From the IMG/VR virus record IMGVR_UViG_3300035156_000206, positions 124,001-188,000 of that record: a stretch of DNA of 64,000 bases, one strand, 5' to 3'. The position numbers were made by a program, and so were the translations under genes. Numbering within the stretch: the stretch's first letter is position 1; the number at the start of each line of letters is the position of its first letter. Positions 39,535-62,375 of the stretch are shown piece by piece. Below the pieces are notes generated by a model. It had not been told where the DNA came from and searched no databases. It saw only the letters and a list, made by a program, of their open reading frames with translations.

Positions 39535-40455
39535 ATGGATGAATTACTGAAGCAATTGTTCGAATCTGAAGTTCTTTCAGAAGAAACAAAAACTCAACTG
39601 CAAGAAGCGATGGCCTCTCAAATGGCTGACATGATTGCAGAAACCAAAACTGCCACCGAAGAAGCTGTTCGTCTGGAACTGGCTGAGCAATGGGTCACTA
39701 CTCGTGAAACATTGATCGAAGCTATCGACACCAAAGTGTCCGATCTGCTGGAAGCCGAAATCACTGAACTGCACAGCGACATTGCTGCATTCCGTGACCT
39801 GGAAGTTGAATACGCTGGCAAGCTGACAGAAGCAAAACAAGAAATGGCTGTTCAGGTAAAATCTGATATGGCTCAACTGATCGAAAAGCTGGACGCGTTC
39901 CTGGAACTGCGCATCGCTGAAGAGTTCGCTGAACTGAAGACATCAATCGACGAAGCCAAAAAGAATGACTTTGGTCGCCGTGTTGTTGAAGCCTTCATGG
40001 GTGAATACCAAGCCAAGTTTGTCGACGAAAACGAAGTACATGCAAAACTGGAAGAAGCAGAAGCTAAACTGCAAGCTGTTACGGCAAAACTGAACGAAGC
40101 ATCGTCAACACGTGCTAAGCTCGAGCGTACCATCAAGCTGGAAAACCTCCTGTCACCTCTCGCCGGTACGCACCGTCAGCTGATGGAAACTATTCTGTCG
40201 ACTGTCAAAACCAACGAATTGGACAAGGCTTACACCAAGTTCATCGGTCGTGTCATGAAAGAAGATGCTGCTCCAACCAATGCCCAGGAAGACAAAGTAC
40301 TGGCCGAAGGTAAAGAAGTACCTGCTGCTGACAAGGCAACCGTAGTAAAAACCGGCGATTCTTTAACAGAATCCCAAAACCTGAACGCCACTGTTTCTGC
40401 GCTGTCTGACGACGAAAAGCGTAAATTACAGCGTATGGCTGGCATTGCTTACTAA
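39535..40455 (+). CDS. Prohead core scaffold protein (T4 gp22-like)
   Basis: Acidic coiled coil; FGRRVVEAF; directly upstream of the major capsid gene. Confidence 0.85.
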   Translation: MDELLKQLFESEVLSEETKTQLQEAMASQMADMIAETKTATEEAVRLELAEQWVTTRETLIEAIDTKVSDLLEAEITELHSDIAAFRDLEVEYAGKLTEAKQEMAVQVKSDMAQLIEKLDAFLELRIAEEFAELKTSIDEAKKNDFGRRVVEAFMGEYQAKFVDENEVHAKLEEAEAKLQAVTAKLNEASSTRAKLERTIKLENLLSPLAGTHRQLMETILSTVKTNELDKAYTKFIGRVMKEDAAPTNAQEDKVLAEGKEVPAADKATVVKTGDSLTESQNLNATVSALSDDEKRKLQRMAGIAY

Positions 40456-40489
40456 ATAGTAGTATAAGAAACATTTAAGGAGATTCAAG

Positions 40490-41815
40490 ATGGACTTACA
40501 AACAAAATGGGCAGAAGAAAAAGTTGCCTTGCTGGAAGGCCTGGAAGGCAAACAACGCGAGACCGTTGGACAGGTTCTGGAAAATCAACGCAATTACGTT
40601 CTGAACGAAACAGCAGCTGAAGGTTCGACCTCAGCAAGCAACATCGCTGGTTTCCGTAAGATCATGATTCCAATGATTCGTCGTATTATCCCTGGCACTA
40701 TTGCTCAGGAACTCGTTGGTGTTCAGCCAATGGAAGGCCCAGTTGGCCTGGTTTACTCGCTGCGCTTTAAGTACGCCGAGTCAGTTACTACTTCGACTTC
40801 GCCAAACGGTGACATCGTTGCTGGTGACGAAATCTGGGGTAACGCAAACCCAATCCGTCGTTTCTATTCGAGCGGCACTGGCGTAGCACAAGTTGCTGGC
40901 GCTGGCGGTATGGGTGCACCTGCACCAGGCGCAATCACTGGAACAGCAAACGGTAACGCATGGGGTTCGACCCTGGACGCGGCTGCTGGTTGTACAGTTG
41001 GTGGTGCTGGTTCGTTCCTGGAAGGTTCAGGCGGTCGTAAGTCGAGCTTCGAGATCGTTTCGCAAGCTGTTGAAGCTGGTACGCGTAAGCTGCAAACTGG
41101 TTGGACTATCGAAGCAATGCAAGATGCTAAGAACCAACACGGTATCGACATCGAGTCAGAAATGACCAAAACGATCTCTGCACAAATCGTGCAAGAAATC
41201 GACAACGAAATCATCACGGACTTGACAGCTCTGGCTGGCACCGTAGCAACATGGGACGGTGCTCTGCCATCAGCTCCAGGCTACTACCGTCCAACATTCA
41301 TCGGCGATCGCTTCGCGAACCTCGGTGTGATGATCTCGTACGTTGCGAATGAAATCGCTCGTAAGACCCGTCGTGGTCCAGGTAACTTCATCGTTGTTTC
41401 GCCAATGATGTTGACCGTTCTGCAACAGGCTGTTAAGTCCCAGTTCGCACCAGCAGTTCGTGGTTCGTTCAAAGGCCCTAACAACACCCAATTGGTTGGT
41501 ACCCTCAACGGTACAATCAAGGTCTACAGCTACCTGTGGAACCAAACACAATCGACCGACGTTGGTGGTACAGGCGACGACACGATTCTGGTTGGCTACA
41601 AAGGCGGTGACGGTGAATCGGACGCAGGTTACTTCTACTGCCCATACATCCCACTGATGAGCTCAGGCGTTATCACTAACCCTGTGACCTTCCAGCCAGT
41701 CGTATCGCTGATGACTCGTTACGGTAAGACATACTTTACCAACCCAACGACTTCGCTCGGCAACTCGGCTGACTACTACGGTAAGATCAACGTCACTAAC
41801 CTGTCGTTCGCTTAA
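40490..41815 (+). CDS. Major capsid protein (T4 gp23-like)
   Basis: IRRIIPGTIAQELVGVQPM, RKLQTGWTIEAMQD, EIDNEII, GYFYCPYIPL, MTRYG. Confidence 0.97.
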   Translation: MDLQTKWAEEKVALLEGLEGKQRETVGQVLENQRNYVLNETAAEGSTSASNIAGFRKIMIPMIRRIIPGTIAQELVGVQPMEGPVGLVYSLRFKYAESVTTSTSPNGDIVAGDEIWGNANPIRRFYSSGTGVAQVAGAGGMGAPAPGAITGTANGNAWGSTLDAAAGCTVGGAGSFLEGSGGRKSSFEIVSQAVEAGTRKLQTGWTIEAMQDAKNQHGIDIESEMTKTISAQIVQEIDNEIITDLTALAGTVATWDGALPSAPGYYRPTFIGDRFANLGVMISYVANEIARKTRRGPGNFIVVSPMMLTVLQQAVKSQFAPAVRGSFKGPNNTQLVGTLNGTIKVYSYLWNQTQSTDVGGTGDDTILVGYKGGDGESDAGYFYCPYIPLMSSGVITNPVTFQPVVSLMTRYGKTYFTNPTTSLGNSADYYGKINVTNLSFA

Positions 41816-44106: not shown

Positions 44107-44541
44107 ATGACACCAGTTGACCAACAATTTATGAAAGTGCCTGAGATAGGACAAGCAGGCGATTGTGCAAGAGCAGCGATAGCAACCCTGCTAGATCTTC
44201 CTTTAATCGATGTTCCCCACTTTCTCCAAGAAGTATTGGATGGCAAGACGAGCGAAAAAGGATCCCTTGGATTCTACGGCTATATTGATGATTGGCTTGA
44301 GGATCGTGGCTACATTATGCAATGGCAACACAATCCAATATACCACCCAGTGGGCACGTACTGCTACATTAGTGGACCAAGTCCAAATATTGTAGGTGGG
44401 TGGCATGCTTGTGTTGGGCAAATACAAGAGGATCGCACAATCAAACTATTGCACGATCCTCACCCGCTTAAGAAAGGCTTGTTAGAGCCTGAACGCTGGA
44501 AGTTTAGCTTTTTGGTGAAACATCGTCGATCAGTGTCTTGA
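44107..44541 (+). CDS. Hypothetical protein, possibly papain-like (Cys-His-Asp)
   Basis: Q...GDCARAAIA, WHACV, HDPHP. Confidence 0.5.
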   Translation: MTPVDQQFMKVPEIGQAGDCARAAIATLLDLPLIDVPHFLQEVLDGKTSEKGSLGFYGYIDDWLEDRGYIMQWQHNPIYHPVGTYCYISGPSPNIVGGWHACVGQIQEDRTIKLLHDPHPLKKGLLEPERWKFSFLVKHRRSVS

Positions 44542-45538
44542 TGCTTGGCCGGCTATACGGCACGTGGGGCTTCTTCCCATCAAACTGTTCGTAGATGTAG
44601 TGGGTGAACTGGCTTTGCAGCTGTCCATCCACCATACGGGCACCAAAGGCGCCGTACACAGCTTTGAACTTACGGCCAGTCTCGGCATTCTCGTAAGGCA
44701 CCACTGCGATTGAGGACATGAAGTTCTCCAGCTTGCGCAGACTTGGCTTTTCGTAGAACAGCTCGGTGATCCAACCATTGATCTCGATTTCACCACCACT
44801 GCCGATGTTCTTCTGGGTGAAAATCCCCTTCCAGAATGTGGAATCGTGGAACACAAAGGAGGTGAGTATCTGATCCAGTACACCATGCACAACACGCATG
44901 TAACCAGCAGCACCTGTCAAACCAACTGAGTCAAACAGCTTGGCAATGCCATCCGCACTATTCACCAGGCTGTCCCAGTCAGCAACGGTGCCGCCTACTT
45001 CGACTTCTGGGATACCACAACAGAAGGTCATGTAGTTGTAGTACGCCTGTACACCGTCAAGCAATGCAGCACATAGCGCAAGCCTGGATTCTTTTGTCAG
45101 TGTCGACAGCTCAGGCACAAACATTGCTTGGTCCGTAGGCATAAGACTGGTCAGCTGATCCATCACCGAATCGAGATCCATTTGTGTTGGGTCAGTTGTA
45201 GGCACCATGATGGTGACCTTATCATCAGACCGGGTGAACAGTGGACGGCAGGCTTCCGTGTTGGCCTTGATGATCTTGGCAACCTCACACATCACAATGA
45301 ACCAGAGATCCTGAGGGAGGATCAACATCTTCTGGTGGGTTGAGTACGCGGTGCTCAATGTACCCACGAAGCCAAGTGCTGGATACACATCGGCTTCTTC
45401 TGGTGGCATTGCTGTCACCAGCTTGAAGTGATTCTGCTCGGTGTTGAGCTTCACTTCGAGGCTGCTGACGATCTGCAACACTTCCTTCCTGCGACGGATT
45501 GGTGTTGCTTCGAGACTTGCATCGATTACTACTTTCAT
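44504..45538 (-). CDS. DUF4419-like protein
   Basis: AYSTHQKMLILPQDLW, CGIPEVEVGGTVADW, FW...GSGG..INGWIT. Confidence 0.7.
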   Translation of the reverse strand: MKVVIDASLEATPIRRRKEVLQIVSSLEVKLNTEQNHFKLVTAMPPEEADVYPALGFVGTLSTAYSTHQKMLILPQDLWFIVMCEVAKIIKANTEACRPLFTRSDDKVTIMVPTTDPTQMDLDSVMDQLTSLMPTDQAMFVPELSTLTKESRLALCAALLDGVQAYYNYMTFCCGIPEVEVGGTVADWDSLVNSADGIAKLFDSVGLTGAAGYMRVVHGVLDQILTSFVFHDSTFWKGIFTQKNIGSGGEIEINGWITELFYEKPSLRKLENFMSSIAVVPYENAETGRKFKAVYGAFGARMVDGQLQSQFTHYIYEQFDGKKPHVPYSRPSIKTLIDDVSPKS

Positions 45539-45546
45539 GTATGTTC

Positions 45547-45858
45547 CTAACGGTCGTTTACGAATTTGTGGAGACGCTTCTTGGCTTTTGCAGCCTTGAT
45601 CCCTTTCCAACGTTTCACTTCTTTATCTGCCAATCCACTCTTGATCATGTTCTTGATGCCCCACAGACCATAATAGTTCAATGCATCTAACATGGCTTGT
45701 GCAAGACTCTCACCGCCAGGGTTCTTTCGTGCATTTCTTCCAAGGAAGATAATGTACTCCCGCAGCTCGTAAGGAATGCAAAACTTGAGCATCCCCTCGT
45801 GCATGGCCGTGCGGGAGGCATCGATACCTCCCGTAAGCTTAAACTCGATCGTGTTCAT
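45547..45858 (-). CDS. Hypothetical basic protein
   Basis: TAATG coupling to the radical SAM gene. Confidence 0.65.
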   Translation of the reverse strand: MNTIEFKLTGGIDASRTAMHEGMLKFCIPYELREYIIFLGRNARKNPGGESLAQAMLDALNYYGLWGIKNMIKSGLADKEVKRWKGIKAAKAKKRLHKFVNDR

Positions 45859-46787
45859 TACAGTTCGCGTGGAGCGTGTACGATAGGGATGGAACGGCCG
45901 ATGCTTGGCTTAGCCAGTTCAGGATGTTGACGCATCCAGTCTTGGACGAACCAGAGCTGGCCGCAACCGCCGCCGATATCATCTTGACCTGCAGGATCGA
46001 AACAGCGAGTGGAGTAGCCGTAACCATTCAGCAGACTCATGAAGTCTTCGGCCAGCTGACGTTGGCGGATGTTCGCGGCCGCAACAGCTTCATCACGCTC
46101 ACACACGACCGAGATTGTCGCCTGCCATACACCTGGATTGAACAAACGATAGATGCGAGCAGCATCTTCTGGTGACGTATTGTCCGCGTGTGCGCAGTAG
46201 TTGAAGAATGGCATGCGTCCGGTGGCTGCAAACCACTTCTCGCCTTCTTGGCTGATTTCGTACAGATCAAGCTTGGCCTTGAACGGCACCAGCTTGTCAC
46301 GCGCTTCGTCAGTGCTCTCATGAACACTGAACTGGAGGCCGATGTTGGGGAATTCAACCGAGAGGTTGCGAATGGCTTCGTAGTCTGCCTTTGGTGCCGA
46401 TGTGCTAATCAGCAAAGCAAACCGTGGGTACTTCTCGCTGAGCATGCGAATGGCCCCGGACAGTCCCTTGATGTTGAGCAATGGCTCACCCATCGACATG
46501 AACATGATTTGGCACCGTTCGACTTTTTCAGGATCGATATTGCGATCCGCAAACAGGTGGTCAACCTGTGCAACGATCTCTTCAGCGGTCAGTGACCGGA
46601 CAAAGGAGTCGCCGGCGCCACAGAAGCGGCAACCAACTGGACAGCCACTTTGGGTGGAGCAGCAGATCACCGTGCGTGCTTCGTAGGTGGGATATTTGTA
46701 CAGTACTGCTTCAGCAACGGCATTGCCAAAGTCGAACACATACTTGCTGACATTCTCGTCAGTTGAATCAACGCGCTTGACGTCCAT
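45858..46787 (-). CDS. RlmN/Cfr-family radical SAM methyltransferase-like protein lacking the N-terminal domain
   Basis: ICCSTQSGCPVGCRFC, MSMGEP, QFSVH, DIGGGCGQL. Confidence 0.85.
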   Translation of the reverse strand: MDVKRVDSTDENVSKYVFDFGNAVAEAVLYKYPTYEARTVICCSTQSGCPVGCRFCGAGDSFVRSLTAEEIVAQVDHLFADRNIDPEKVERCQIMFMSMGEPLLNIKGLSGAIRMLSEKYPRFALLISTSAPKADYEAIRNLSVEFPNIGLQFSVHESTDEARDKLVPFKAKLDLYEISQEGEKWFAATGRMPFFNYCAHADNTSPEDAARIYRLFNPGVWQATISVVCERDEAVAAANIRQRQLAEDFMSLLNGYGYSTRCFDPAGQDDIGGGCGQLWFVQDWMRQHPELAKPSIGRSIPIVHAPREL

Positions 46788-47352: not shown

Positions 47353-47771
47353 GGCAGGATCCCCAGCATAGCTAATTGCATTTTCAGACGTGTATAATCA
47401 GCCCACACTTTCTTTGGTAAGTCTTCTACCTCTTTTCCAGACATCGCGTCGTACTTAGCAGTCAGAGTCTTGTACAGTTCGATGGTAGGAGCGTACTCTT
47501 TGGTCCGCTCAGCTATTCTGTCCTCTGGTGATACCATCGGAGCGAGCTCGACTGTTGTAGTGACGGTGTAGACGGCTACCTGAGCCATCTTATAATCTTC
47601 GCTGTTGCGGGCTAAGTCGTCACATGCTGCTATTGCAGCTTCGCGGCTCTTGAATGATTTGCCTAGGCATGCTTTAGTTGGATCTTGGGTAAAGCGTTGT
47701 TGCTCCCAGACTGCACCATCATATACATAGCCAAATGGCGGAATGAATATGCCATAACGTACTTGTTTCAT
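47349..47771 (-). CDS. Hypothetical early protein
   Basis: AGGAGG RBS; TTGACA-16 bp-TATGAT promoter at about 47797-47824. Confidence 0.7.
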   Translation of the reverse strand: MKQVRYGIFIPPFGYVYDGAVWEQQRFTQDPTKACLGKSFKSREAAIAACDDLARNSEDYKMAQVAVYTVTTTVELAPMVSPEDRIAERTKEYAPTIELYKTLTAKYDAMSGKEVEDLPKKVWADYTRLKMQLAMLGILP

Positions 47772-47888
47772 GTCACCCTCCTGATTAGATTCGATAATCA
47801 TACAAGGGTCTAGGAATATGTCAACAACTCGTTGTAAATTATTCAGATTTCTGTACAATGCAAAGCATGTCTCTTTAACGGATAAAAT

Positions 47889-48086
47889 ATGGCACACGAC
47901 CACGAACACACAGAACACTATCACACAGACGAAAAGGGTGTACTCGTCAAGTGCTACCACCAATGCAAGGCACTCCTTGCGATGCCATCATTTTGGATTG
48001 GGTCAACAATCAGCTTTCCGCTGGAGCACTTTATCTGGGAAAAACTTCCTGGGTTTAGCCATCTAGCCCATTGGATGGGGATGTAA
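47889..48086 (+). CDS. Small His-rich putative membrane protein
   Basis: MAHDHEHTEHYH followed by a hydrophobic segment; TAATG coupling. Confidence 0.55.
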   Translation: MAHDHEHTEHYHTDEKGVLVKCYHQCKALLAMPSFWIGSTISFPLEHFIWEKLPGFSHLAHWMGM

Positions 48087-48613
48087 TGAGATTCGATCTT
48101 CCTCAAGAGCAATTAAATGATGTCAGGCGGTCAGTGGACGATCCCGACTACTTTACCCAGAAGTTCCTGCACATCCCATTGGTGGACTTAGATGTCGAGG
48201 TTCCAATCACACAAGATCCAAAGTTGGGATGCATGCAATTGTGTGCATACGTCGTCTGGCACTTGATCTTCCGAATGGAGCAGACTGTTGTAGTTATCTC
48301 CCCGACTATGGAACATCGCCAGTCGATGAATACCATAGTCACTGATATGTTAGCTATGATACCAGCATGGTTCAGTGTTAATGTCAGAGAAGGGCTGAAG
48401 ACTCGCATTGTCTTGGGAAACAATTCTCGAGCTGTGTTTGCTGTTGCTTCTTCTGCACCAATCCGTGGTGAAGCTGTGAATACGTTTGTGTTTCCCAAGT
48501 ACGATCAAGTGAAAGAATACATCAAGTTTGAGATGATACAGTACTTGCTTCCAATGTTGTATACACACGCAACTGTAGTGATGTCTGGAACGGACGAGCG
48601 ACTGGATTACTGA
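48086..48613 (+). CDS. Degenerate paralog of the terminase large-subunit ATPase domain
   Basis: Colinear with TerL residues about 18-205, but Walker A is deleted and Walker B DE is changed to PK. Confidence 0.75.
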   Translation: MRFDLPQEQLNDVRRSVDDPDYFTQKFLHIPLVDLDVEVPITQDPKLGCMQLCAYVVWHLIFRMEQTVVVISPTMEHRQSMNTIVTDMLAMIPAWFSVNVREGLKTRIVLGNNSRAVFAVASSAPIRGEAVNTFVFPKYDQVKEYIKFEMIQYLLPMLYTHATVVMSGTDERLDY

Positions 48614-48632: not shown

Positions 48633-48660
48633 CAAACCCGCTTCGGCGGGTTTCTTTTTG
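48633..48660 (+). terminator. Rho-independent terminator
   Basis: aaacccgc-TTCG-gcgggttt-ctttttg. Confidence 0.8.
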
Positions 48661-48730: not shown

Positions 48731-48738
48731 TATAAATA
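48731..48738 (+). promoter_or_regulatory. Late promoter TATAAATA
   Basis: Exact consensus upstream of the ORF at 48770. Confidence 0.75.
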
Positions 48739-48769: not shown

Positions 48770-49084
48770 GTGGATCACTTATCATTTAAAGATTACCTAG
48801 TCTCGAAGGTTCAGCTGAAGAATGCGCTGCACGAGACGCCATACAAGATTGCAACGTACCGCGTCACGAAGTACTGCAAGCTTGAATTGGCAGAGGGAGA
48901 TGAATTGGTATCACTGAAGCCAAACAACGAGCTGATCGTTGAGTGGGTGTATACTGACATGGCGAGCCCAACCATACAGACGGTGGTGCTTATGACCAAA
49001 GAATCTTCCAGCGCCATTGCTGTCAAACGCGATGCTCATAAGCTAACCAAATGGCTCACATCAAATACTGAAGCGGTCGATTAA
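48770..49084 (+). CDS. Hypothetical late protein
   Basis: Late promoter; TAAGG RBS; GTG start; LSFKDYL N-terminus. Confidence 0.65.
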   Translation: MDHLSFKDYLVSKVQLKNALHETPYKIATYRVTKYCKLELAEGDELVSLKPNNELIVEWVYTDMASPTIQTVVLMTKESSSAIAVKRDAHKLTKWLTSNTEAVD

Positions 49085-49794: not shown

Positions 49795-49925
49795 TTTAAG
49801 ACCCTCCTGTTGAGAAATTAAAGAACTAAGTCGATGGGGTGACATTAAAAGTCTTGAACAAAAAAGTAAACAATTATTTTAGATCCCATCGTAAATAAAT
49901 ACAATACATTTTAGGAGTTCCATAC

Positions 49926-52556
49926 ATGGCAACATTCGATACATACGCAGACGCACCATTCCAGATCAAGCGTGAAGGCCAAGAGATTGTCGTGCGACAG
50001 TCCCGCATTAGCCCAACAACAATCCGCATCTCCTGGACACTGCCTTCTGCACTGACATGCAATTTGCCATACTCATACAATGGTGCAATTGTAACCCTCG
50101 CGTCCGACCCAACGGCATTGAGTAAACTGCCCGTAGATGGATCCGTCTATACTGCAGACGCAACGGCAGACTCTGATCTTCACTCTGGCAGCAAGATTGG
50201 CACTGCTAAGGTAGTAGGAGCATTCTATAATGATGTGCTTACAAGCTACGTCGACGTGATGGATGCACCTGAAGGAAAAGCCTTCTATGCTTCTGTGCAT
50301 GCAGTTGACAACGTCAATCGGTATCATACAGATGGTGCACACTCATACTCACTGCCGTACGGTAAAGACATCACTCTAGGTACATCTGGGTACCAAATGA
50401 TCTTCATGGGTGCTAATGGCATCTTTGGTACGACTCCAACTAACCTCGACCCACTGCTGAACTACAATTTCAAGCTGTCTGTTGATGGTACAATGGAAAT
50501 TCCTGTGACGATCTCAGGAGCCGATGCTGACACCTATGACAAGCTGATTACAGCGATCAACACCAAACTGAAGCTGCATGGCGCTGTTGTGCAATCACCA
50601 GAAATGCCTGCTCAAGGTCAATACTGGCTGAATGTCCCTGCTAAAGAACTGAAACAGTGGGATGGAATTAAGTACACAACTATCCCTGGTGTATACTTCG
50701 TAGCTAATGATCCTCTGTCTCCTAATGCTGGAGACTACTGGTACAATCCTACATTAGATCAGCTGAGTGTGTTCAATGCTGGATGGGAAATCAAAGAATT
50801 CCACAATTGGCCTCGTGATCCACGCAACCCGTACTGCAATGATTTCTGGTACGATGGAACTGTCATGCGCAAGTGGAATGGTGGCGCTTGGGTTGTACAA
50901 ACGTTAGTGCACTCAGCAATCGATCCAGCCCTGGCTCCGATCATGACTTGCCACAGCTATTGGGTTCATGATGACAAAGTATATCAGTGGGATGAGAAGA
51001 ATTGCATCTGGGTACTCCAAGTGTCCACACCAACAGCTCCAACTACGCCCACAAGTGGAATGCTCCACCTCGATGCTACCAACCATAAGGTTTACATTTG
51101 GTCTGACATTGATGCCGCGTGGATTGACGTTGGAGCCGTATTCTCTACTATCGACCCTTCGTTAGTAGTCGAGGTTGCACAGAACGTCGTATGGCATGAC
51201 ACAATCGCCAACTTGTTCTTTAACCGCGACGGAACATCATGGGTGCCAGTAAAGTATCTCAAAGGAACGACAAAGCCACAACTGATCACAGATGGTGCAT
51301 TATGGTTCAATAGCACTGACAAGAAGTGGTACAAAATGGCAATGGGTATGTGGATTGTGTTTATCCCAGTCGTAAGCACCGTTACTCCGAACGTTCCACT
51401 GCTAGGTGCTATGTGGTACCAAGCTTCAACTTTTACTCTGTGGAAATTTGATGGGTCTGTATGGGTAAGTGTTCCTTTCTCGACCACGTCTGTCACGCCT
51501 GCTGTTGGCACCGTATGGTACAACACAACAAATGATACTCTGTACACTTGGACAGGAACTATGTGGGCCGTTCGTTTAGCTCCAGCATTGTTCTCGATCA
51601 ATGAGCTAGGTAATATCAAAGTGGAGAGCAGCACCACAGGAAGCAAGTCATCAGCTTGCATTAGCGATCCAGGTACTCTGTGGAATACAGTGTCTCTGAC
51701 GCCAGTTCCACGTCCTCAGCAGCCAATGAAGGGTACGGATCCACTGTCAAGTGTTCCAGCATACCAGCAGGCTGGTGTAGGCACAGACGGAAGTCAGGAC
51801 GAGCGTCGTGCATTAGTATCACGTATCAAGTCAGCATTGGGATACCCAGTGATGCAAGTAGAACTGACAAAGGACCAAATTGACATGGCGATTGACATGG
51901 CTCTGGAGAAATTGCGTGCAATTAGCTCAGCGCCGTACCGTCGCGGATACTTCGCTCTCGATTTGCAACCACGCGTACAGAAATACATCCTGACTAATGA
52001 GACTGTTGGACACAACAAGATCGTGGACGTGCTTTACGTATACCGTCCTTCGGCTTCGTACTTGAGCACTGCTGCAGGCAATGACGTGTATGGTCAGATG
52101 ATGATCCAGAGCCTGTTCACTATGGGCAAGTTTGACCTGCTGAGTCACCACATGATGACTCAATACACAGAAACAATGCGCCAAGTATTTGCTACAGAGA
52201 TCCAACACTCATGGGATGAACATGCCCGTGCGCTGACGATTTACAAAGACCTGCCACGTGCTGAGAAGGTTCTGGTAGATGCAATGGTGGAGCGTACTGA
52301 GCAAGACCTGATGTCAGACCGTTGGACTCGCCCATGGATACAAAAGTACGCTACAGCACAATGCCGCTACATGTTGTCAGAAATTCGCGGTAAGTTCTCT
52401 ACCTTACCAGGTGCTGGTGGTGCAGTAACACTGAATGCTGCTGATCTGCGTAGTGCCGGTGACAAAGAGATTCAAGAATGTATCGAAGACGTCGACAACT
52501 ATGTGGTTGGTGGTAAGACAGAATTTGGTATGGCATCAGACTTCGTTTTAGGATAA
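49926..52556 (+). CDS. Neck protein (gp13-like C-terminus) with large N-terminal Trp-repeat extension
   Basis: C-terminal IKSALGYPVMQVELTKDQI...RGKFSTLPGAGGAVTLNA; about 10 PxxGxxWYN...W repeats. Confidence 0.85.
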   Translation: MATFDTYADAPFQIKREGQEIVVRQSRISPTTIRISWTLPSALTCNLPYSYNGAIVTLASDPTALSKLPVDGSVYTADATADSDLHSGSKIGTAKVVGAFYNDVLTSYVDVMDAPEGKAFYASVHAVDNVNRYHTDGAHSYSLPYGKDITLGTSGYQMIFMGANGIFGTTPTNLDPLLNYNFKLSVDGTMEIPVTISGADADTYDKLITAINTKLKLHGAVVQSPEMPAQGQYWLNVPAKELKQWDGIKYTTIPGVYFVANDPLSPNAGDYWYNPTLDQLSVFNAGWEIKEFHNWPRDPRNPYCNDFWYDGTVMRKWNGGAWVVQTLVHSAIDPALAPIMTCHSYWVHDDKVYQWDEKNCIWVLQVSTPTAPTTPTSGMLHLDATNHKVYIWSDIDAAWIDVGAVFSTIDPSLVVEVAQNVVWHDTIANLFFNRDGTSWVPVKYLKGTTKPQLITDGALWFNSTDKKWYKMAMGMWIVFIPVVSTVTPNVPLLGAMWYQASTFTLWKFDGSVWVSVPFSTTSVTPAVGTVWYNTTNDTLYTWTGTMWAVRLAPALFSINELGNIKVESSTTGSKSSACISDPGTLWNTVSLTPVPRPQQPMKGTDPLSSVPAYQQAGVGTDGSQDERRALVSRIKSALGYPVMQVELTKDQIDMAIDMALEKLRAISSAPYRRGYFALDLQPRVQKYILTNETVGHNKIVDVLYVYRPSASYLSTAAGNDVYGQMMIQSLFTMGKFDLLSHHMMTQYTETMRQVFATEIQHSWDEHARALTIYKDLPRAEKVLVDAMVERTEQDLMSDRWTRPWIQKYATAQCRYMLSEIRGKFSTLPGAGGAVTLNAADLRSAGDKEIQECIEDVDNYVVGGKTEFGMASDFVLG

Positions 52557-57182: not shown

Positions 57183-57776
57183 ATGGCAAATATTAACGAC
57201 ATGGGTCTCCCGTTACCAGGTGGTTCTGGAATGGGCATCTTGCACCCAAAGCTGAAAAAGAACTTCATGGTTCAATTCATCAACATCGGCTTTGTAGGCT
57301 CGCGTGACCTGTCAATGCAAGCAATCTCAGTAACGCGTCCTAAGGTCTCGTTTGCTGAAGTAGAACTACACCGCTACAACTCGATCTCATGGTATGCTGG
57401 TAAGCAATCGTATGAGCCACTGTCGATCGTTATCCAAGATAACTACTCGAACGGTGCAACTCGTATCATCCAGTCACAACTTGAGCGTCAACAAAAACTG
57501 ATTGGTGCTGATAGTGGTCCTTTCCTGGCTACTGCTCCAGATGGTAACACGTACAAATTCGCTGTCAAGCTGACCCAGCTGGATGGTGGTACGCAAGTAC
57601 TGGAAGAGTGGAACTATGAAGGTTGCTTCATCCAAGCAGCCGACTACGATACAGTGGAATACTCATCGAGCGATCCTGTGACGATTACATTGACGATTCG
57701 TTTCGACAATGCGTTCCAAGTGTTTGGTGCTACTCCATCAAGTGGTCAGTCACTGGGCGGTAACGCTCCACGCTAA
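57183..57776 (+). CDS. Tail tube protein (T4 gp19-like)
   Basis: VTRPKVSF, YAGKQSYEP, W.YEGCF, ITLTIRFDNA; follows the sheath gene. Confidence 0.92.
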   Translation: MANINDMGLPLPGGSGMGILHPKLKKNFMVQFINIGFVGSRDLSMQAISVTRPKVSFAEVELHRYNSISWYAGKQSYEPLSIVIQDNYSNGATRIIQSQLERQQKLIGADSGPFLATAPDGNTYKFAVKLTQLDGGTQVLEEWNYEGCFIQAADYDTVEYSSSDPVTITLTIRFDNAFQVFGATPSSGQSLGGNAPR

Positions 57777-59587: not shown

Positions 59588-60046
59588 ATGGAAACAAAAA
59601 TCGTTGAGGTGCAATTTCAGCACCCTGCAGAACAAATATTCGATCTCGAGCCAGGGTCTACTGTAATTGACCAAGTGGTGACTACGTCTCCTCCCGAAGA
59701 GCAGCCTGTACAGTACGATGACAAGGACCAAGAGATTAATGATCAGCTCCAATTGGTATTCAACGCTGCATATGGCACGTTTGAATCTCAGCGGATGCTA
59801 ACAGAAGGAATGAACCCACAGTTTCAGAACCGTGCAATGGAAGTCGCCGCTCAGTTCCTAAATACAGCCTTGGCTGCAGTGAATGCAAAGAGTCAGTTCA
59901 AGCAGGCCAAAGACAAGATTGTCAAGCCTACCGGGAACGTCAATACCACAACTAACAACCTGATCATGGACCGGGACGATATGTTGAAGATGTTGATGGA
60001 ACAAAAAAAGAACGCAGAACGAATTATCGATCAAGAGGAACAATAA
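59588..60046 (+). CDS. Terminase small subunit (gp16-like)
   Basis: RAMEVAAQFL, TTNNLIMDRDDMLKML; upstream of TerL. Confidence 0.75.
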   Translation: METKIVEVQFQHPAEQIFDLEPGSTVIDQVVTTSPPEEQPVQYDDKDQEINDQLQLVFNAAYGTFESQRMLTEGMNPQFQNRAMEVAAQFLNTALAAVNAKSQFKQAKDKIVKPTGNVNTTTNNLIMDRDDMLKMLMEQKKNAERIIDQEEQ

Positions 60047-60808: not shown

Positions 60809-60816
60809 TATAAATA
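60809..60816 (+). promoter_or_regulatory. Late promoter TATAAATA
   Basis: Exact consensus upstream of TerL. Confidence 0.8.
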
Positions 60817-60842: not shown

Positions 60843-62375
60843 ATGGCAAGTAATGTCCAGAAAAACGCGTCAGCAGGCGTAGAGTACAATGGCGATAGGA
60901 TGCAAGAGCTCCTGCGCTGTGCAATGAGCGCGTCTTACTTCATCAACAAGTACGTCAAGATTCAGCACCCAATGAAAGGGCAGGTTCCATTTTCATTGTA
61001 TCCGTACCAATTTAAGATGCTCGAGACGATGCAGCACAATCGTAAGACCATCGTACTGTCTGCACGTCAGACTGGTAAATCACAAACCTCAGCAGCGTTT
61101 CTACTCTGGTACGCACTGTTCAATGAAGACAAGACTGTCTTGATTGCATCGAACAAGAACAGCAATGCGCTGGAGATGATCTCTCGTATCCGCTACATGT
61201 ATGAGACGGTCCCTGATTGGCTAAAGTCTGGAATCACTAAAGACGGGTGGAACAAACTGTCTGTAGGCTTTACCAATAAGTCCCGTATCATATCGACGGC
61301 TACTTCCGAATCATCGGGTCGAGGTCTTTCGATCTCCCTGCTGTTTTGTGACGAGTTAGCTTTCGTGAACCGCACAGTACAAGAAGAGTTCTGGAAATCG
61401 ATTTCCCCTACGCTGTCAACAGGTGGTGGTTGTATCATTTCGTCAACACCTAATGGTGAAGGTGACCTGTTTGCTAATCTGTGGCACGGTGCCGAGCTTG
61501 GTGCTACTGGAGCGTTCAAGCCTGTGTATGTAGCATGGGATGAACCACCGGGACGCGATGACTCATTCAAGGAAGAGAAGATTGCGGAACTAGGTATGCT
61601 CGCATGGCGACAGGAATTTGAGTGCGAATTCTTGACATCTGAAGCATTGCTGATCGACCCAATGTTCTTGCAGAACCTAGGAACAATCTGTAAGAAGATT
61701 GAACCTATCAAGCAAGAGATGGGCACAGACTGGTTCGATGTGCTGAAAGCGGATGGTACGTATCTGATGGGTGTAGATCCATCCACGGGTACAGGAAGTG
61801 ACTTTAGTGTCATTCAGGTATTTGAGTTTCCTACTCTAATTCAGGTTGCACAATTCCGATCAAATCTAGTATCATCTCCACAGCTGTATGGTGTGATGAA
61901 ATATATACTAAAAGAGATGGAGAAGATCAACGCAAAATGTTACTTCAGCGTTGAGAACAATGGTGTTGGTGAAGGTGTTATTGCGTTGTACCAGAATGAC
62001 GAGAACATGCCTGAATCAGGTCAGTTCATTTCTGAAGAAGGCAAGAACCGCATTGGTATGTCAACGACTACCCGCTCCAAGCTGAAGGCTTGTCTCAACT
62101 TCAAGTCGCTGCTGGAATCAGGCAAGATCACCATCAAGTCGTCACTGCTTGTAACAGAGCTGAAGATGTTCGCTACAGGCAAAGGTTCATACATTGCTCT
62201 GCCAGGCGGAACGGACGATATGGTTATGGCTTGTATGATTGTGGTGCGTCTGTTAAGCGAGATCGCTTCGTACGAACAAGAGGCTTTTGACAAGCTGTAT
62301 GTGTACTCGGAAGAGGAGATGCAGTTTGGAGATGATGAGGGCAGTATTGAAGAGCCACTCGGAATGATATTCTAA
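60843..62375 (+). CDS. Terminase large subunit (T4 gp17-like)
   Basis: LYPYQ, ARQTGKS, LLFCDELAF, ISSTPNG, QEFECEF, GVDPSTG, ENN, DDMVMA. Confidence 0.97.
   Translation: MASNVQKNASAGVEYNGDRMQELLRCAMSASYFINKYVKIQHPMKGQVPFSLYPYQFKMLETMQHNRKTIVLSARQTGKSQTSAAFLLWYALFNEDKTVLIASNKNSNALEMISRIRYMYETVPDWLKSGITKDGWNKLSVGFTNKSRIISTATSESSGRGLSISLLFCDELAFVNRTVQEEFWKSISPTLSTGGGCIISSTPNGEGDLFANLWHGAELGATGAFKPVYVAWDEPPGRDDSFKEEKIAELGMLAWRQEFECEFLTSEALLIDPMFLQNLGTICKKIEPIKQEMGTDWFDVLKADGTYLMGVDPSTGTGSDFSVIQVFEFPTLIQVAQFRSNLVSSPQLYGVMKYILKEMEKINAKCYFSVENNGVGEGVIALYQNDENMPESGQFISEEGKNRIGMSTTTRSKLKACLNFKSLLESGKITIKSSLLVTELKMFATGKGSYIALPGGTDDMVMACMIVVRLLSEIASYEQEAFDKLYVYSEEEMQFGDDEGSIEEPLGMIF

What the first reader, a model, noticed from the sequence alone, without database searches (positions are those of the whole stretch)
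48086..48613. Catalytically dead terminase-ATPase paralog: second candidate decoy
Seen: it aligns colinearly with TerL (60843): DDPDYFTQKFLHI/MSASYFINKYVKI, AYVVWHLIF..QTVVVIS/AFLLWYALF..KTVLIAS, IPAWF/VPDWL, NNSRAV/NKSRII, IRGEAVNTFVFPKY/GRGLSISLLFCDEL, VMSGT/IISST. The YQ motif and Walker A are deleted, Walker B DE becomes PK, and there is no nuclease domain. The ORF is nonetheless intact, translationally coupled and has its own terminator. Established: Avs (STAND) immune receptors recognise the terminase ATPase fold. Inference: it is a non-activating decoy or a packaging regulator. Together with the Gol mimic, it suggests a set of structural-protein decoys.
Basis: partly seen in the sequence, partly recalled or inferred. 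Interest (0 to 1): 0.75.

Follow-up and report, generated by a model that had tools for sequence, protein, structure and literature searches.

The report
Dead, fast-evolving copy of phage terminase ATPase
A giant soil phage carries a small, intact but enzymatically dead copy of the motor domain of its DNA-packaging enzyme; it belongs to a little-noticed, rapidly evolving family of such copies in T4-related giant phages whose job (packaging helper or immune-evasion protein) is still unknown.

Summary
The Q-motif region is deleted, the P-loop lysine is gone, Walker B DE has become PK, and there is no lid or nuclease domain. Its ATG overlaps the stop of a conserved 65-aa ORF, and a conserved terminator follows.

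It is not an orphan or a pseudogene. Five other lineages keep an intact 173-182-aa ortholog in the same capsid-to-neck gap. With an alignment it folds confidently as a T4 gp17-like ATPase core.

It belongs to a large family of short TerL paralogs. These lose the lysine and the catalytic glutamate but keep the arginine at the trans-arginine-finger position. Truncated terminases of this kind were noted in Rak2-like phages in 2017, without a function.

The family evolves 5-10 times faster than TerL and is missing from close relatives such as XacN1.

The decoy idea is neither shown nor excluded. Fast evolution, patchy presence and a sigma70-type, terminator-insulated cassette fit counter-defence. 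Loss of the ATP site that Avs2 contacts, and adjacency to TerL in other phages, fit a TerL-binding regulator better.

My best guess, at modest confidence, is a non-catalytic TerL-binding subunit acting as a regulator or shield.

The parts
48086..48613 (+). 175-aa pseudo-ATPase paralog of TerL. It has the ASCE core only: no Q motif, no P-loop lysine, Walker B DE replaced by PK, no lid and no nuclease.
47889..48086 (+). 65-aa His/Cys-rich small ORF with a hydrophobic C-terminal half. It is the first gene of the cassette. Its TAA overlaps the paralog's ATG (TAATG). Orthologs in L003 and L005 are 72% and 51% identical.
47832..47859 (+). Sigma70-like promoter, TTGTAA-16-TACAAT, ending 29 nt before the ATG of the 65-aa ORF. 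L003 has TTGAAC-16-TATAAT at the same 29-nt distance and L005 has TTGATC-17-TACAAT at 30 nt. There is no late TAAATA motif here.
48634..48653 (+). Intrinsic terminator, AAACCCGC-TTCG-GCGGGTTT followed by CTTTTT. It closes the cassette and is conserved in L003 and L004.
48731..48738 (+). Late-type promoter TATAAATA for the next gene, the GTG-start ORF 48770-49084. It marks the return to late transcription and is conserved in L003, L004 and L039.
60843..62375 (+). The functional TerL (510 aa) with intact ARQTGKS, CDE and SST motifs and a nuclease domain. A late TATAAATA motif starts at 60809, 27 nt upstream of its ATG. This is the parent fold of the paralog but not its recent donor.
59588..60046 (+). 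Candidate small terminase (phrog_445, E 6.6e-6). Its presence shows that the paralog is not standing in for TerS in this phage.

Best explanation
The gene encodes a selectively maintained pseudo-enzyme. It is an ancient, much-reduced paralog of the TerL ATPase core that can no longer bind or hydrolyse ATP. It acts only by binding other proteins.

The most likely mechanism is inferred, not shown. The protein keeps the face of a TerL subunit that normally contacts the nucleotide site of the neighbouring subunit, including the conserved Arg-Gly at the trans-arginine-finger position. It would therefore dock on the ATP-site face of free TerL as a 'neighbour mimic'. In doing so it would regulate, or cap and shield, TerL before TerL assembles on the portal.

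What is shown: homology, fold, loss of catalytic residues, retention of the Arg-Gly, family membership, conserved synteny, rapid divergence and dispensability among relatives.

What is inferred: the binding partner and the purpose. The confidence given below is for the mechanism. Confidence that this is a real, maintained, dead TerL paralog is about 0.95.
For: - Fold: AlphaFold2 with a 56-row alignment gives pLDDT 94.7 and pTM 0.90. The best PDB match is the T4 gp17 ATPase domain, TMq 0.79, E 2.5e-9.
- Selective loss versus retention across 38 short paralogs and 20 TerLs. The Walker A Lys is 95% in TerLs and essentially lost in the paralogs. The catalytic Glu is 100% in TerLs and lost in the paralogs. 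R160/G161 are kept (R 71% with Lys in most of the rest, G 95%).
- This Arg lies about 10 residues before the Walker B Asp. [quoted passage not shown]
- Maintenance: intact 173-182-aa orthologs occur in five other lineages in the same MCP-to-gp13 gap, despite only 23-32% pairwise identity.
- Link to packaging in other phages: the dead paralog overlaps the start of TerL in Serratia phage BF (gp272) and coliphage 121Q (gp3). It lies directly upstream of TerL in Xoo-sp13 (gene 242, annotated as TerS).
- Literature: the Rak2-like 'truncated large terminase' was reported in PMC5259590 and PMC7760394.
Against: - No binding was demonstrated. The TerL-plus-paralog co-fold gave no verdict (score 0.53 against a control of 0.36) and cannot be used either way.
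- A partner as slowly evolving as TerL would be expected to constrain the paralog more. It is nevertheless the fastest-evolving gene of its block.
- It is absent from XacN1, RAS14 and RsoM2USA, so it is not needed for packaging as such.
- In this phage it lies 12 kb from TerL, behind a sigma70-type promoter rather than the late TAAATA motif that precedes TerL. Co-expression with TerL is therefore not evident.
- The retained Arg-Gly could be kept for structural reasons only.
Confidence: 0.35

Rival explanations
1. Immune decoy. The protein mimics the TerL ATPase fold and occupies the sensor pocket of terminase-sensing defence proteins (Avs1-3, possibly Upx) without triggering their oligomerisation. 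This would protect the real TerL from detection.
For: - Divergence is very fast compared with all syntenic neighbours: 27-32% against 65-93%. The same holds in Rak2-like phages, where the paralogs are 23% identical and the TerLs 71%.
- Presence is patchy among close relatives.
- It sits in a variable accessory island with a sigma70-type promoter conserved in three lineages, and it is insulated by a terminator.
- The retained Arg appears to be the terminase Arg154 that EcAvs2 salt-bridges. This equivalence is my own inference from the position in the T7 gp19 sequence.
- The authors of PMC13601566 themselves suggest that non-terminase TerL-like proteins may be anti-defence proteins.
Against: - EcAvs2 contacts the terminase-bound ATP and the Mg site of its active site through a bridging ATP. 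This protein has no P-loop lysine, no Walker B acidic pair and no nuclease domain, so much of that interface is missing.
- The tested analogue, T4 vs.8, activates EcAvs2 rather than inhibiting it.
- Relatives L038 and L039 carry a late-type TAAATA motif in front of the gene, so early expression is not a family trait.
- The paralog is translationally linked to TerL in BF and 121Q.
- No published TerL decoy was found.
Confidence: 0.2
2. Decaying or functionless remnant of a TerL duplication or of a split TerL gene, retained by chance.
For: - It has lost every catalytic motif and two domains.
- It evolves very fast and is missing from some relatives.
- Its function is unknown.
Against: - Six lineages at 23-32% identity all keep an uninterrupted ORF of 173-182 aa at the same locus. 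Start-codon overlaps, promoters and a conserved terminator are also kept.
- Core residues F23, W58, F62, P93, N112 and G128 are kept at 84-97% across the family.
- The alignment yields a very confident fold.
- On the tree it does not group with the window's own TerL, which sits with the XacN1 and Xoo-sp13 TerLs (SH-aLRT 93), so it is not a recent copy.
- TerL itself is complete.
Confidence: 0.03
3. A different acquired role unrelated to TerL or its sensors. Examples are binding TerS or the portal, interfering with the packaging motor of competing phages or satellites, or binding DNA.
For: - It is dispensable among relatives and evolves fast.
- Its partners in the cassette vary. The 65-aa His-rich ORF is present in the window, L003 and L005, but other small ORFs replace it in L038 and L039.
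- The N-terminal DPxYF helix pair is strongly conserved (F23 at 97%), and I cannot assign a role to it.
Against: There is no positive evidence for any specific alternative partner. A separate TerS candidate exists. The conserved Arg-Gly points to the inter-subunit face.
Confidence: 0.25

Closest known systems
'Truncated large terminase / terminase-like protein' of Rak2-like jumbo phages: CBB_274, Serratia BF gp272, 121Q gp3 (phrog_5989). Also reported for Sinorhizobium phiM12 and phiN3, and found here in Xanthomonas phage Xoo-sp13 gene 242.
   Same: - It is a short protein homologous only to the TerL N-terminal ATPase region, in T4-superfamily jumbo myoviruses.
- The Walker A Lys and catalytic Glu are replaced: BF has GIT and DD, 121Q has GTT and DM, Xoo-sp13 has GTS and DV.
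- The Arg-Gly before the Walker B strand is kept.
- Divergence is very fast.
- No function is assigned (PMC5259590, PMC7760394).
   Different: - Those proteins are 227-236 aa. They keep the Q-motif region and sit directly upstream of TerL, overlapping it in BF and 121Q.
- The window's protein is 175 aa, has a further deletion of about 21-23 aa, and has lost even the Walker B Asp.
- It lies 12 kb from TerL in the MCP-to-gp13 gap, with its own sigma70-type promoter and terminator.
T4 vs.8, a TerL-ATPase-like protein that activates EcAvs2 on co-expression (PMC13601566)
   Same: It is a small stand-alone protein with the terminase ATPase fold, encoded away from the terminase genes in a T4-type phage. 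Its function is unknown and an anti-defence role has been suggested.
   Different: - vs.8 keeps the Walker A and B motifs (GGRQSGKS and IIDE) and is predicted to bind Avs2 with the bridging ATP.
- There is no detectable sequence relationship to this subfamily (hhalign probability 0.5%).
Functional large terminase TerL (T4 gp17; Pfam Terminase_6N plus Terminase_6C)
   Same: It has the same ASCE ATPase core fold (TMq 0.79 to PDB 2o0h) and colinear conserved blocks: DPxYF, AYxxW..F, LPxW, NxS and RG.
   Different: It has no adenine-binding Q motif, no P-loop Lys, no catalytic Glu or Asp, no lid subdomain and no nuclease domain. It therefore cannot be a packaging ATPase or nuclease.
Non-catalytic subunits of ring or clamp-loader ATPases that donate an arginine finger without hydrolysing ATP (for example clamp-loader delta-prime). 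This is an analogy from general knowledge and was not tested.
   Same: The pattern is the same: cis nucleotide-site residues are lost and the trans-acting Arg position is kept.
   Different: There is no evidence that this protein enters a ring with TerL. The family is unrelated.

Membership tests
Functional TerL (large terminase) | Walker A GxxxxGK[ST] with the lysine | tested here: not met
   PKLG aligns to RQTGK and the lysine column is a gap.
Functional TerL (large terminase) | Walker B hhhhDE with the catalytic glutamate | tested here: not met
   FVFPKY aligns to LLFCDE, so D has become P and E has become K.
Functional TerL (large terminase) | C-terminal RNase H-like nuclease domain | tested here: not met
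   The protein ends at residue 175, after the C-motif strand. There is no Pfam Terminase_6C hit.
Functional TerL (large terminase) | ASCE ATPase core fold of T4 gp17 type | tested here: met
   Model pLDDT 94.7. Foldseek against 2o0h, 2o0j and 3cpe gives TMq 0.75-0.79 and E about 1e-9.
Truncated terminase-like protein of T4-superfamily jumbo phages (phrog_5989 type) | Homology restricted to the TerL N-terminal ATPase region, in a short stand-alone ORF | tested here: met
   phrog_5989 E 8.8e-10. The family profile hits BF gp272 at 2.6e-14, Xoo-sp13 gene 242 at 9e-19 and 121Q gp3 at 1.5e-4.
Truncated terminase-like protein of T4-superfamily jumbo phages (phrog_5989 type) | Carried by a T4-like jumbo myovirus alongside a complete TerL | tested here: met
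   The source is a 292-kb virus record. It has a T4-type gp13, gp15, sheath, tube, gp4, TerS and TerL. Its MCP is 62-65% identical to XacN1 and Xoo-sp13.
Truncated terminase-like protein of T4-superfamily jumbo phages (phrog_5989 type) | Position immediately upstream of TerL | tested here: not met
   Here it lies 12.2 kb upstream of TerL, between the MCP and gp13 modules. The slot before TerL holds an unrelated 224-aa ORF.
Truncated terminase-like protein of T4-superfamily jumbo phages (phrog_5989 type) | Common descent with the Rak2-like and Xoo-sp13 copies (one clade apart from TerLs) | tested here: inconclusive
   The quick ML tree places it in a weakly supported group (SH-aLRT 84) with Xoo-sp13 gene 242 and BF gp272. 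The dead label needs only 3 changes against 17.8 in shuffles. Branches are very long, so attraction is possible.
T4 vs.8-like ATPase (Avs2 activator) | [quoted passage not shown] | tested here: not met
   vs.8 has GRQSGKS and IIDE. The window protein has neither.
T4 vs.8-like ATPase (Avs2 activator) | Sequence homology to vs.8 | tested here: not met
   hhalign of the subfamily profile against vs.8 gives probability 0.5% and E 0.13.
Anti-defence decoy of terminase sensors (hypothetical class) | Binds the Avs1-3 or Upx sensor and blocks activation by TerL | not testable with these tools
   No sensor sequence could be admitted for co-folding. This needs co-expression toxicity and binding assays.
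Small terminase (TerS) | TerS family homology | tested here: not met
   There is no TerS PHROG or Pfam hit. A separate TerS candidate lies at 59588-60046 (phrog_445).

The most novel reading that the evidence does not exclude
The whole family of lysine-less, glutamate-less short TerL paralogs would be a counter-measure against terminase-sensing immunity (Avs1-3, Upx). This family includes the Rak2-like 'truncated terminases' and at least 30 clusters at 50% identity. The proteins would act either as non-activating decoys or as neighbour-mimics that cap the ATP-site face of monomeric TerL, the surface that EcAvs2 contacts. Their 5-10-fold faster evolution would then reflect an arms race with those sensors.
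Probability: 0.2. Interest if true: 0.85.

Novelty: new variant of a known kind. Interest (0 to 1): 0.55.

Why it matters
Large terminase is one of the main molecular patterns that bacterial immune receptors use to detect tailed phages, and no phage counter-measure aimed at that detection turned up in my literature searches. This work shows that the odd 'truncated terminase' of some jumbo phages belongs to a broad family. Its members are systematically inactivated and evolve fast, yet their fold is conserved and they keep the inter-subunit arginine. That gives a concrete, testable candidate for either a new regulatory subunit of the packaging motor or a terminase-directed immune-evasion protein. 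Culturable carriers for the experiments exist: Xoo-sp13, Serratia BF and coliphage 121Q. If neither role holds, it is still a clean example of a viral pseudo-enzyme derived from a hallmark gene.

Tried and rejected
- Single-sequence AlphaFold2 was useless (pLDDT 34). The prediction had to be redone with an alignment.
- Word-based homolog search with the protein itself found only the protein itself.
- Scans of viral contigs with the protein, with P0002 and with P0003 found nothing.
- The subfamily alignment was too divergent for pattern scanning.
- gp13-anchored scans of viral and metagenome contigs gave seven loci, none carrying the paralog.
- The third word-based search, with the subfamily profile, gave no close relatives. 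A dN/dS test on moderately diverged pairs was therefore impossible, because synonymous sites are saturated among the orthologs in hand.
- The TerL-plus-paralog co-fold gave no verdict and is not used.
- The records behind L003-L005 are not held, so their TerLs could not be compared.
It was rebuilt without those rows.
- Only a DNA run from a biocrust metagenome holds the locus, so there are no expression data.
- P0004, a 1017-aa tandem-repeat protein, is a spurious hit.
- The idea that the paralog replaces TerS was rejected, because a TerS candidate is present.
- The idea that it is the N-terminal piece of a split TerL was rejected, because TerL is complete.
- 'Uniformly early expression' was rejected as a family trait, because L038 and L039 carry late-type motifs.
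- Literature searches found no functional study of these proteins and no published terminase decoy.

Full report
**What is there**

The window is bases 124001-188000 of a 291,967-bp virus record. A biocrust metagenome run holds the locus and may be its source. It is a T4-type jumbo myovirus:
- The window carries a gp13-like neck protein, a gp15-like protein, sheath, tube, a gp4-like head-completion nuclease, a TerS candidate, TerL and a gp23-like capsid protein.
- Its capsid protein is 62-65% identical to those of Xanthomonas phages XacN1 and Xoo-sp13 and Stenotrophomonas phages CM1 and RAS14.

The ORF at 48086-48613(+) encodes 175 aa.
- Its ATG shares a base with the TAA of the preceding 65-aa ORF, giving TAATG.
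- A strong hairpin plus T-run follows at 48634-48653.

**Is the TerL similarity real?**

Yes.
- BLASTP against the window's own TerL gives E 4e-9 over residues 53-169 against 84-202.
- PHROG phrog_5989, 'terminase large subunit', gives E 8.8e-10.
- A profile of the protein and its five same-length relatives hits the window's TerL at 1.6e-26.
- Pfam finds nothing.
- Folded alone the protein gives a meaningless model. With a 56-row alignment AlphaFold2 gives pLDDT 94.7 and pTM 0.90.
- The best PDB matches are the T4 gp17 ATPase domain (2o0h, 2o0j, 3cpe; TMq 0.75-0.79, E about 1e-9). Other large terminases follow.

Motif by motif:
- A deletion of 21-23 residues removes the LYPYQ adenine-binding motif and the following helix.
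- The P-loop is reduced to PKLG. The glycine is kept and the lysine column is empty.
- Walker B D-E is P-K.
- The C-motif SST is SGT.
- The chain stops there, so the lid subdomain and the nuclease domain are absent.

**It is a maintained gene, not a remnant**

An exhaustive profile-free search of 1.8 billion representatives found same-length relatives: P0002, P0003, P0005, P0007 and P0022, of 173-182 aa. All five lie in the same place in their phages, between the capsid gene and the gp13 neck gene.
- The terminator and the late TATAAATA promoter of the next gene are conserved downstream.
- The 65-aa upstream ORF is conserved in two of them, at 72% and 51%.
- The six proteins are only 23-32% identical to one another, yet all are uninterrupted and of the same length. 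That excludes neutral decay.
- On a maximum-likelihood tree the protein does not group with the window's own TerL, which sits with the XacN1 and Xoo-sp13 TerLs (SH-aLRT 93). It falls instead among the other dead paralogs, on a branch about five times longer, 2.43 against 0.46.
- Support is weak and long-branch effects are possible, so a single origin of all dead paralogs is not established.

**A large family, already glimpsed in the literature**

Among the hits, every full-length TerL keeps GK[ST] and DE. Thirty-odd short proteins of 160-320 aa, each representing a 50% identity cluster, have a non-lysine residue in Walker A (R, T, V, N, I, M, E, Q and others). They also have a non-glutamate residue after the Walker B Asp.

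The same is true of proteins in cultured phages:
- Serratia phage BF gp272, annotated as a second 'terminase large subunit'.
- Coliphage 121Q gp3, annotated as hypothetical.
- Xoo-sp13 gene 242, annotated as 'terminase small subunit'.

In all three phages the gene lies directly upstream of TerL, and in BF and 121Q it overlaps TerL's start.

Buttimer et al. [quoted passage not shown] I found no functional study.

The window's copy is a more reduced and relocated variant of this kind.

**What is kept and what is lost**

I compared 38 dead paralogs with 20 TerLs.
- TerL-invariant K79 and E171 are lost. D170 survives in 55% of paralogs.
- Retained positions are F33 (97%), W89 (87%), F93 (84%), P124 (92%), N145 (84%), P189 (79%) and the pair R160/G161 (R 71% with Lys in most of the rest, G 95%).
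- That arginine lies about ten residues before the Walker B aspartate, between helix alpha-2 and strand beta-3. The confirmed trans-arginine finger R139 of P74-26 TerL sits at this position, and T4 also has an arginine there (PMC5727402).
- By position it also corresponds to T7 gp19 R153. I infer that this is the PhiV-1 terminase Arg154 that EcAvs2 salt-bridges (PMC13601566). The equivalence was not tested by superposition.

Losing one's own nucleotide site while keeping the residue that reaches into a neighbour's site is what one expects of a non-catalytic, neighbour-mimicking subunit. That is the basis of my preferred mechanism. It remains an inference.

**Evolutionary behaviour**

Between the window and its syntenic relatives the identities are:

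| Protein | Identity |
|---|---|
| Capsid protein (MCP) | 89-93% |
| gp14-like and gp15-like | 76-77% |
| gp13 | 65-68% |
| Other island genes | 42-72% |
| Short TerL paralog | 26-32% |

The paralog is the lowest of all. In Rak2-like phages BF gp272 and 121Q gp3 are 23% identical while their TerLs are 71% identical.

The gene is absent from the complete genomes of XacN1, RAS14 and RsoM2USA, both with a profile query and with the Xoo-sp13 copy as query. XacN1 and Xoo-sp13 are close relatives, yet the slot before TerL holds the dead paralog in one and an unrelated ORF in the other. The family is therefore accessory and fast-evolving.

**Expression signals**

Genome-wide, the late-type motif TAAATA occurs within 60 nt upstream of 11.3% of genes, against 1.0% of random windows. 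It peaks 20-35 nt before the start codon. Sigma70-like hexamer pairs occur upstream of 16.4% of genes, against 2.8%. Both promoter classes therefore appear to be used.
- TerL, the capsid gene, gp13, the tube gene and others carry the late motif.
- The cassette holding the paralog has no late motif. It has TTGTAA-16-TACAAT ending 29 nt before the first ATG.
- L003 has TTGAAC-16-TATAAT at 29 nt and L005 has TTGATC-17-TACAAT at 30 nt, in otherwise diverged sequence.
- This suggests host-polymerase (early or middle) transcription in this lineage.
- However, the more distant relatives L038 and L039 have TAAATA-type motifs in front of their operons. Timing is therefore not uniform, and I do not lean on it heavily.
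- No RNA data exist for this phage.

**Weighing the explanations**

The pseudogene idea is excluded.

The Avs2/Upx paper also remarks that TerL-like non-terminase proteins might be anti-defence proteins.

It also faces real obstacles:
- EcAvs2 contacts the terminase-bound ATP and the Mg site of its active site through a bridging ATP, and this protein has lost those elements.
- T4 vs.8, the only tested stand-alone TerL-like protein, activates EcAvs2. vs.8 is not detectably related to this family.

The regulator or shield model is supported by the preserved inter-subunit arginine and by the tight linkage to TerL in other phages. It is hard to reconcile with such fast evolution against a slowly evolving partner. 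The one co-fold I could run gave no verdict.

My estimates:

| Explanation | Probability |
|---|---|
| TerL-binding non-catalytic subunit (regulator or shield) | about 0.35 |
| Sensor decoy | about 0.2 |
| Some other binding role | about 0.25 |
| Functionless remnant | about 0.03 |

**Verdict**

The feature is a new, more reduced and relocated variant of a known but uncharacterised kind, the truncated terminase-like protein of T4-superfamily jumbo phages. Its interest is moderate to high. The family-wide pattern documented here, together with the 2026 findings on terminase sensing, makes a specific and easily testable hypothesis about phage evasion of terminase-sensing immunity. Culturable phages that carry the gene are available.

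Noticed in passing
window:47889-48086 (+): A 65-aa ORF with a His-rich N-terminus (HDHEHTEHYH), a CYHxC motif and a hydrophobic, aromatic C-terminal half. It is conserved at 72% in L003 and 51% in L005. It has no Pfam or PHROG match. It may be a small metal-binding membrane protein. It heads the cassette but is missing from the L038 and L039 versions.
   Followed up: partly
whole genome G000; examples at window 40455-40490, 49890-49926, 60809-60816: The late-promoter-like motif [A/C/T]TAAATA is enriched 11-fold within 60 nt upstream of genes, peaking 20-35 nt before the start. Sigma70-like hexamer pairs are enriched 6-fold. The phage seems to use both promoter classes.
   Followed up: partly
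window:44504-47771 (-): An accessory island on the minus strand between the capsid and neck modules. It holds a DUF4419 protein (44504-45538), a radical-SAM protein (45858-46787), a 55-aa Cys-rich ORF and other small ORFs. It is headed by a strong sigma70-like promoter (TTGACA-16-TATGAT, 11 of 12) at 47824-47797. That position implies the first gene starts at the internal Met near 47771. The island's content differs between relatives.
   Followed up: partly
window:48770-49084 (+) versus 48811-49017 (-): Two overlapping open frames on opposite strands. The plus-strand GTG-start ORF (104 aa) has a conserved TATAAATA promoter and a conserved N-terminus in L003, L004 and L039, so it is probably the real gene. 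An ATG-only gene caller picks the minus-strand shadow ORF instead.
   Followed up: partly
window:60048-60722 (+): A 224-aa ORF of unknown function between TerS and TerL, with no Pfam or PHROG match. The gene directly upstream of TerL is the dead TerL paralog in Xoo-sp13 and an unrelated 242-aa ORF in XacN1, so this position is a variable slot.
   Followed up: no
L007:2253-2948 (Xanthomonas phage Xoo-sp13 gene 242): This gene is annotated 'terminase small subunit' in GenBank. It is in fact a TerL ATPase-domain paralog with GTS in place of GKS and DV in place of DE (phrog_5989, E 4e-28). The annotation is probably wrong.
   Followed up: yes
window:57869-59152 (+): A 427-aa protein whose residues 158-360 match a tail-tube family (phrog_4542, E 5.7e-13). 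It lies directly after the 197-aa tube protein (57183-57776) and looks like an enlarged tube paralog.
   Followed up: no
P0004 (hit): A 1017-aa protein made of about 14 near-identical repeats of roughly 70 aa matched residues 26-68 of the query at E 1.5e-15. It looks like a translated tandem DNA repeat and a spurious match.
   Followed up: no
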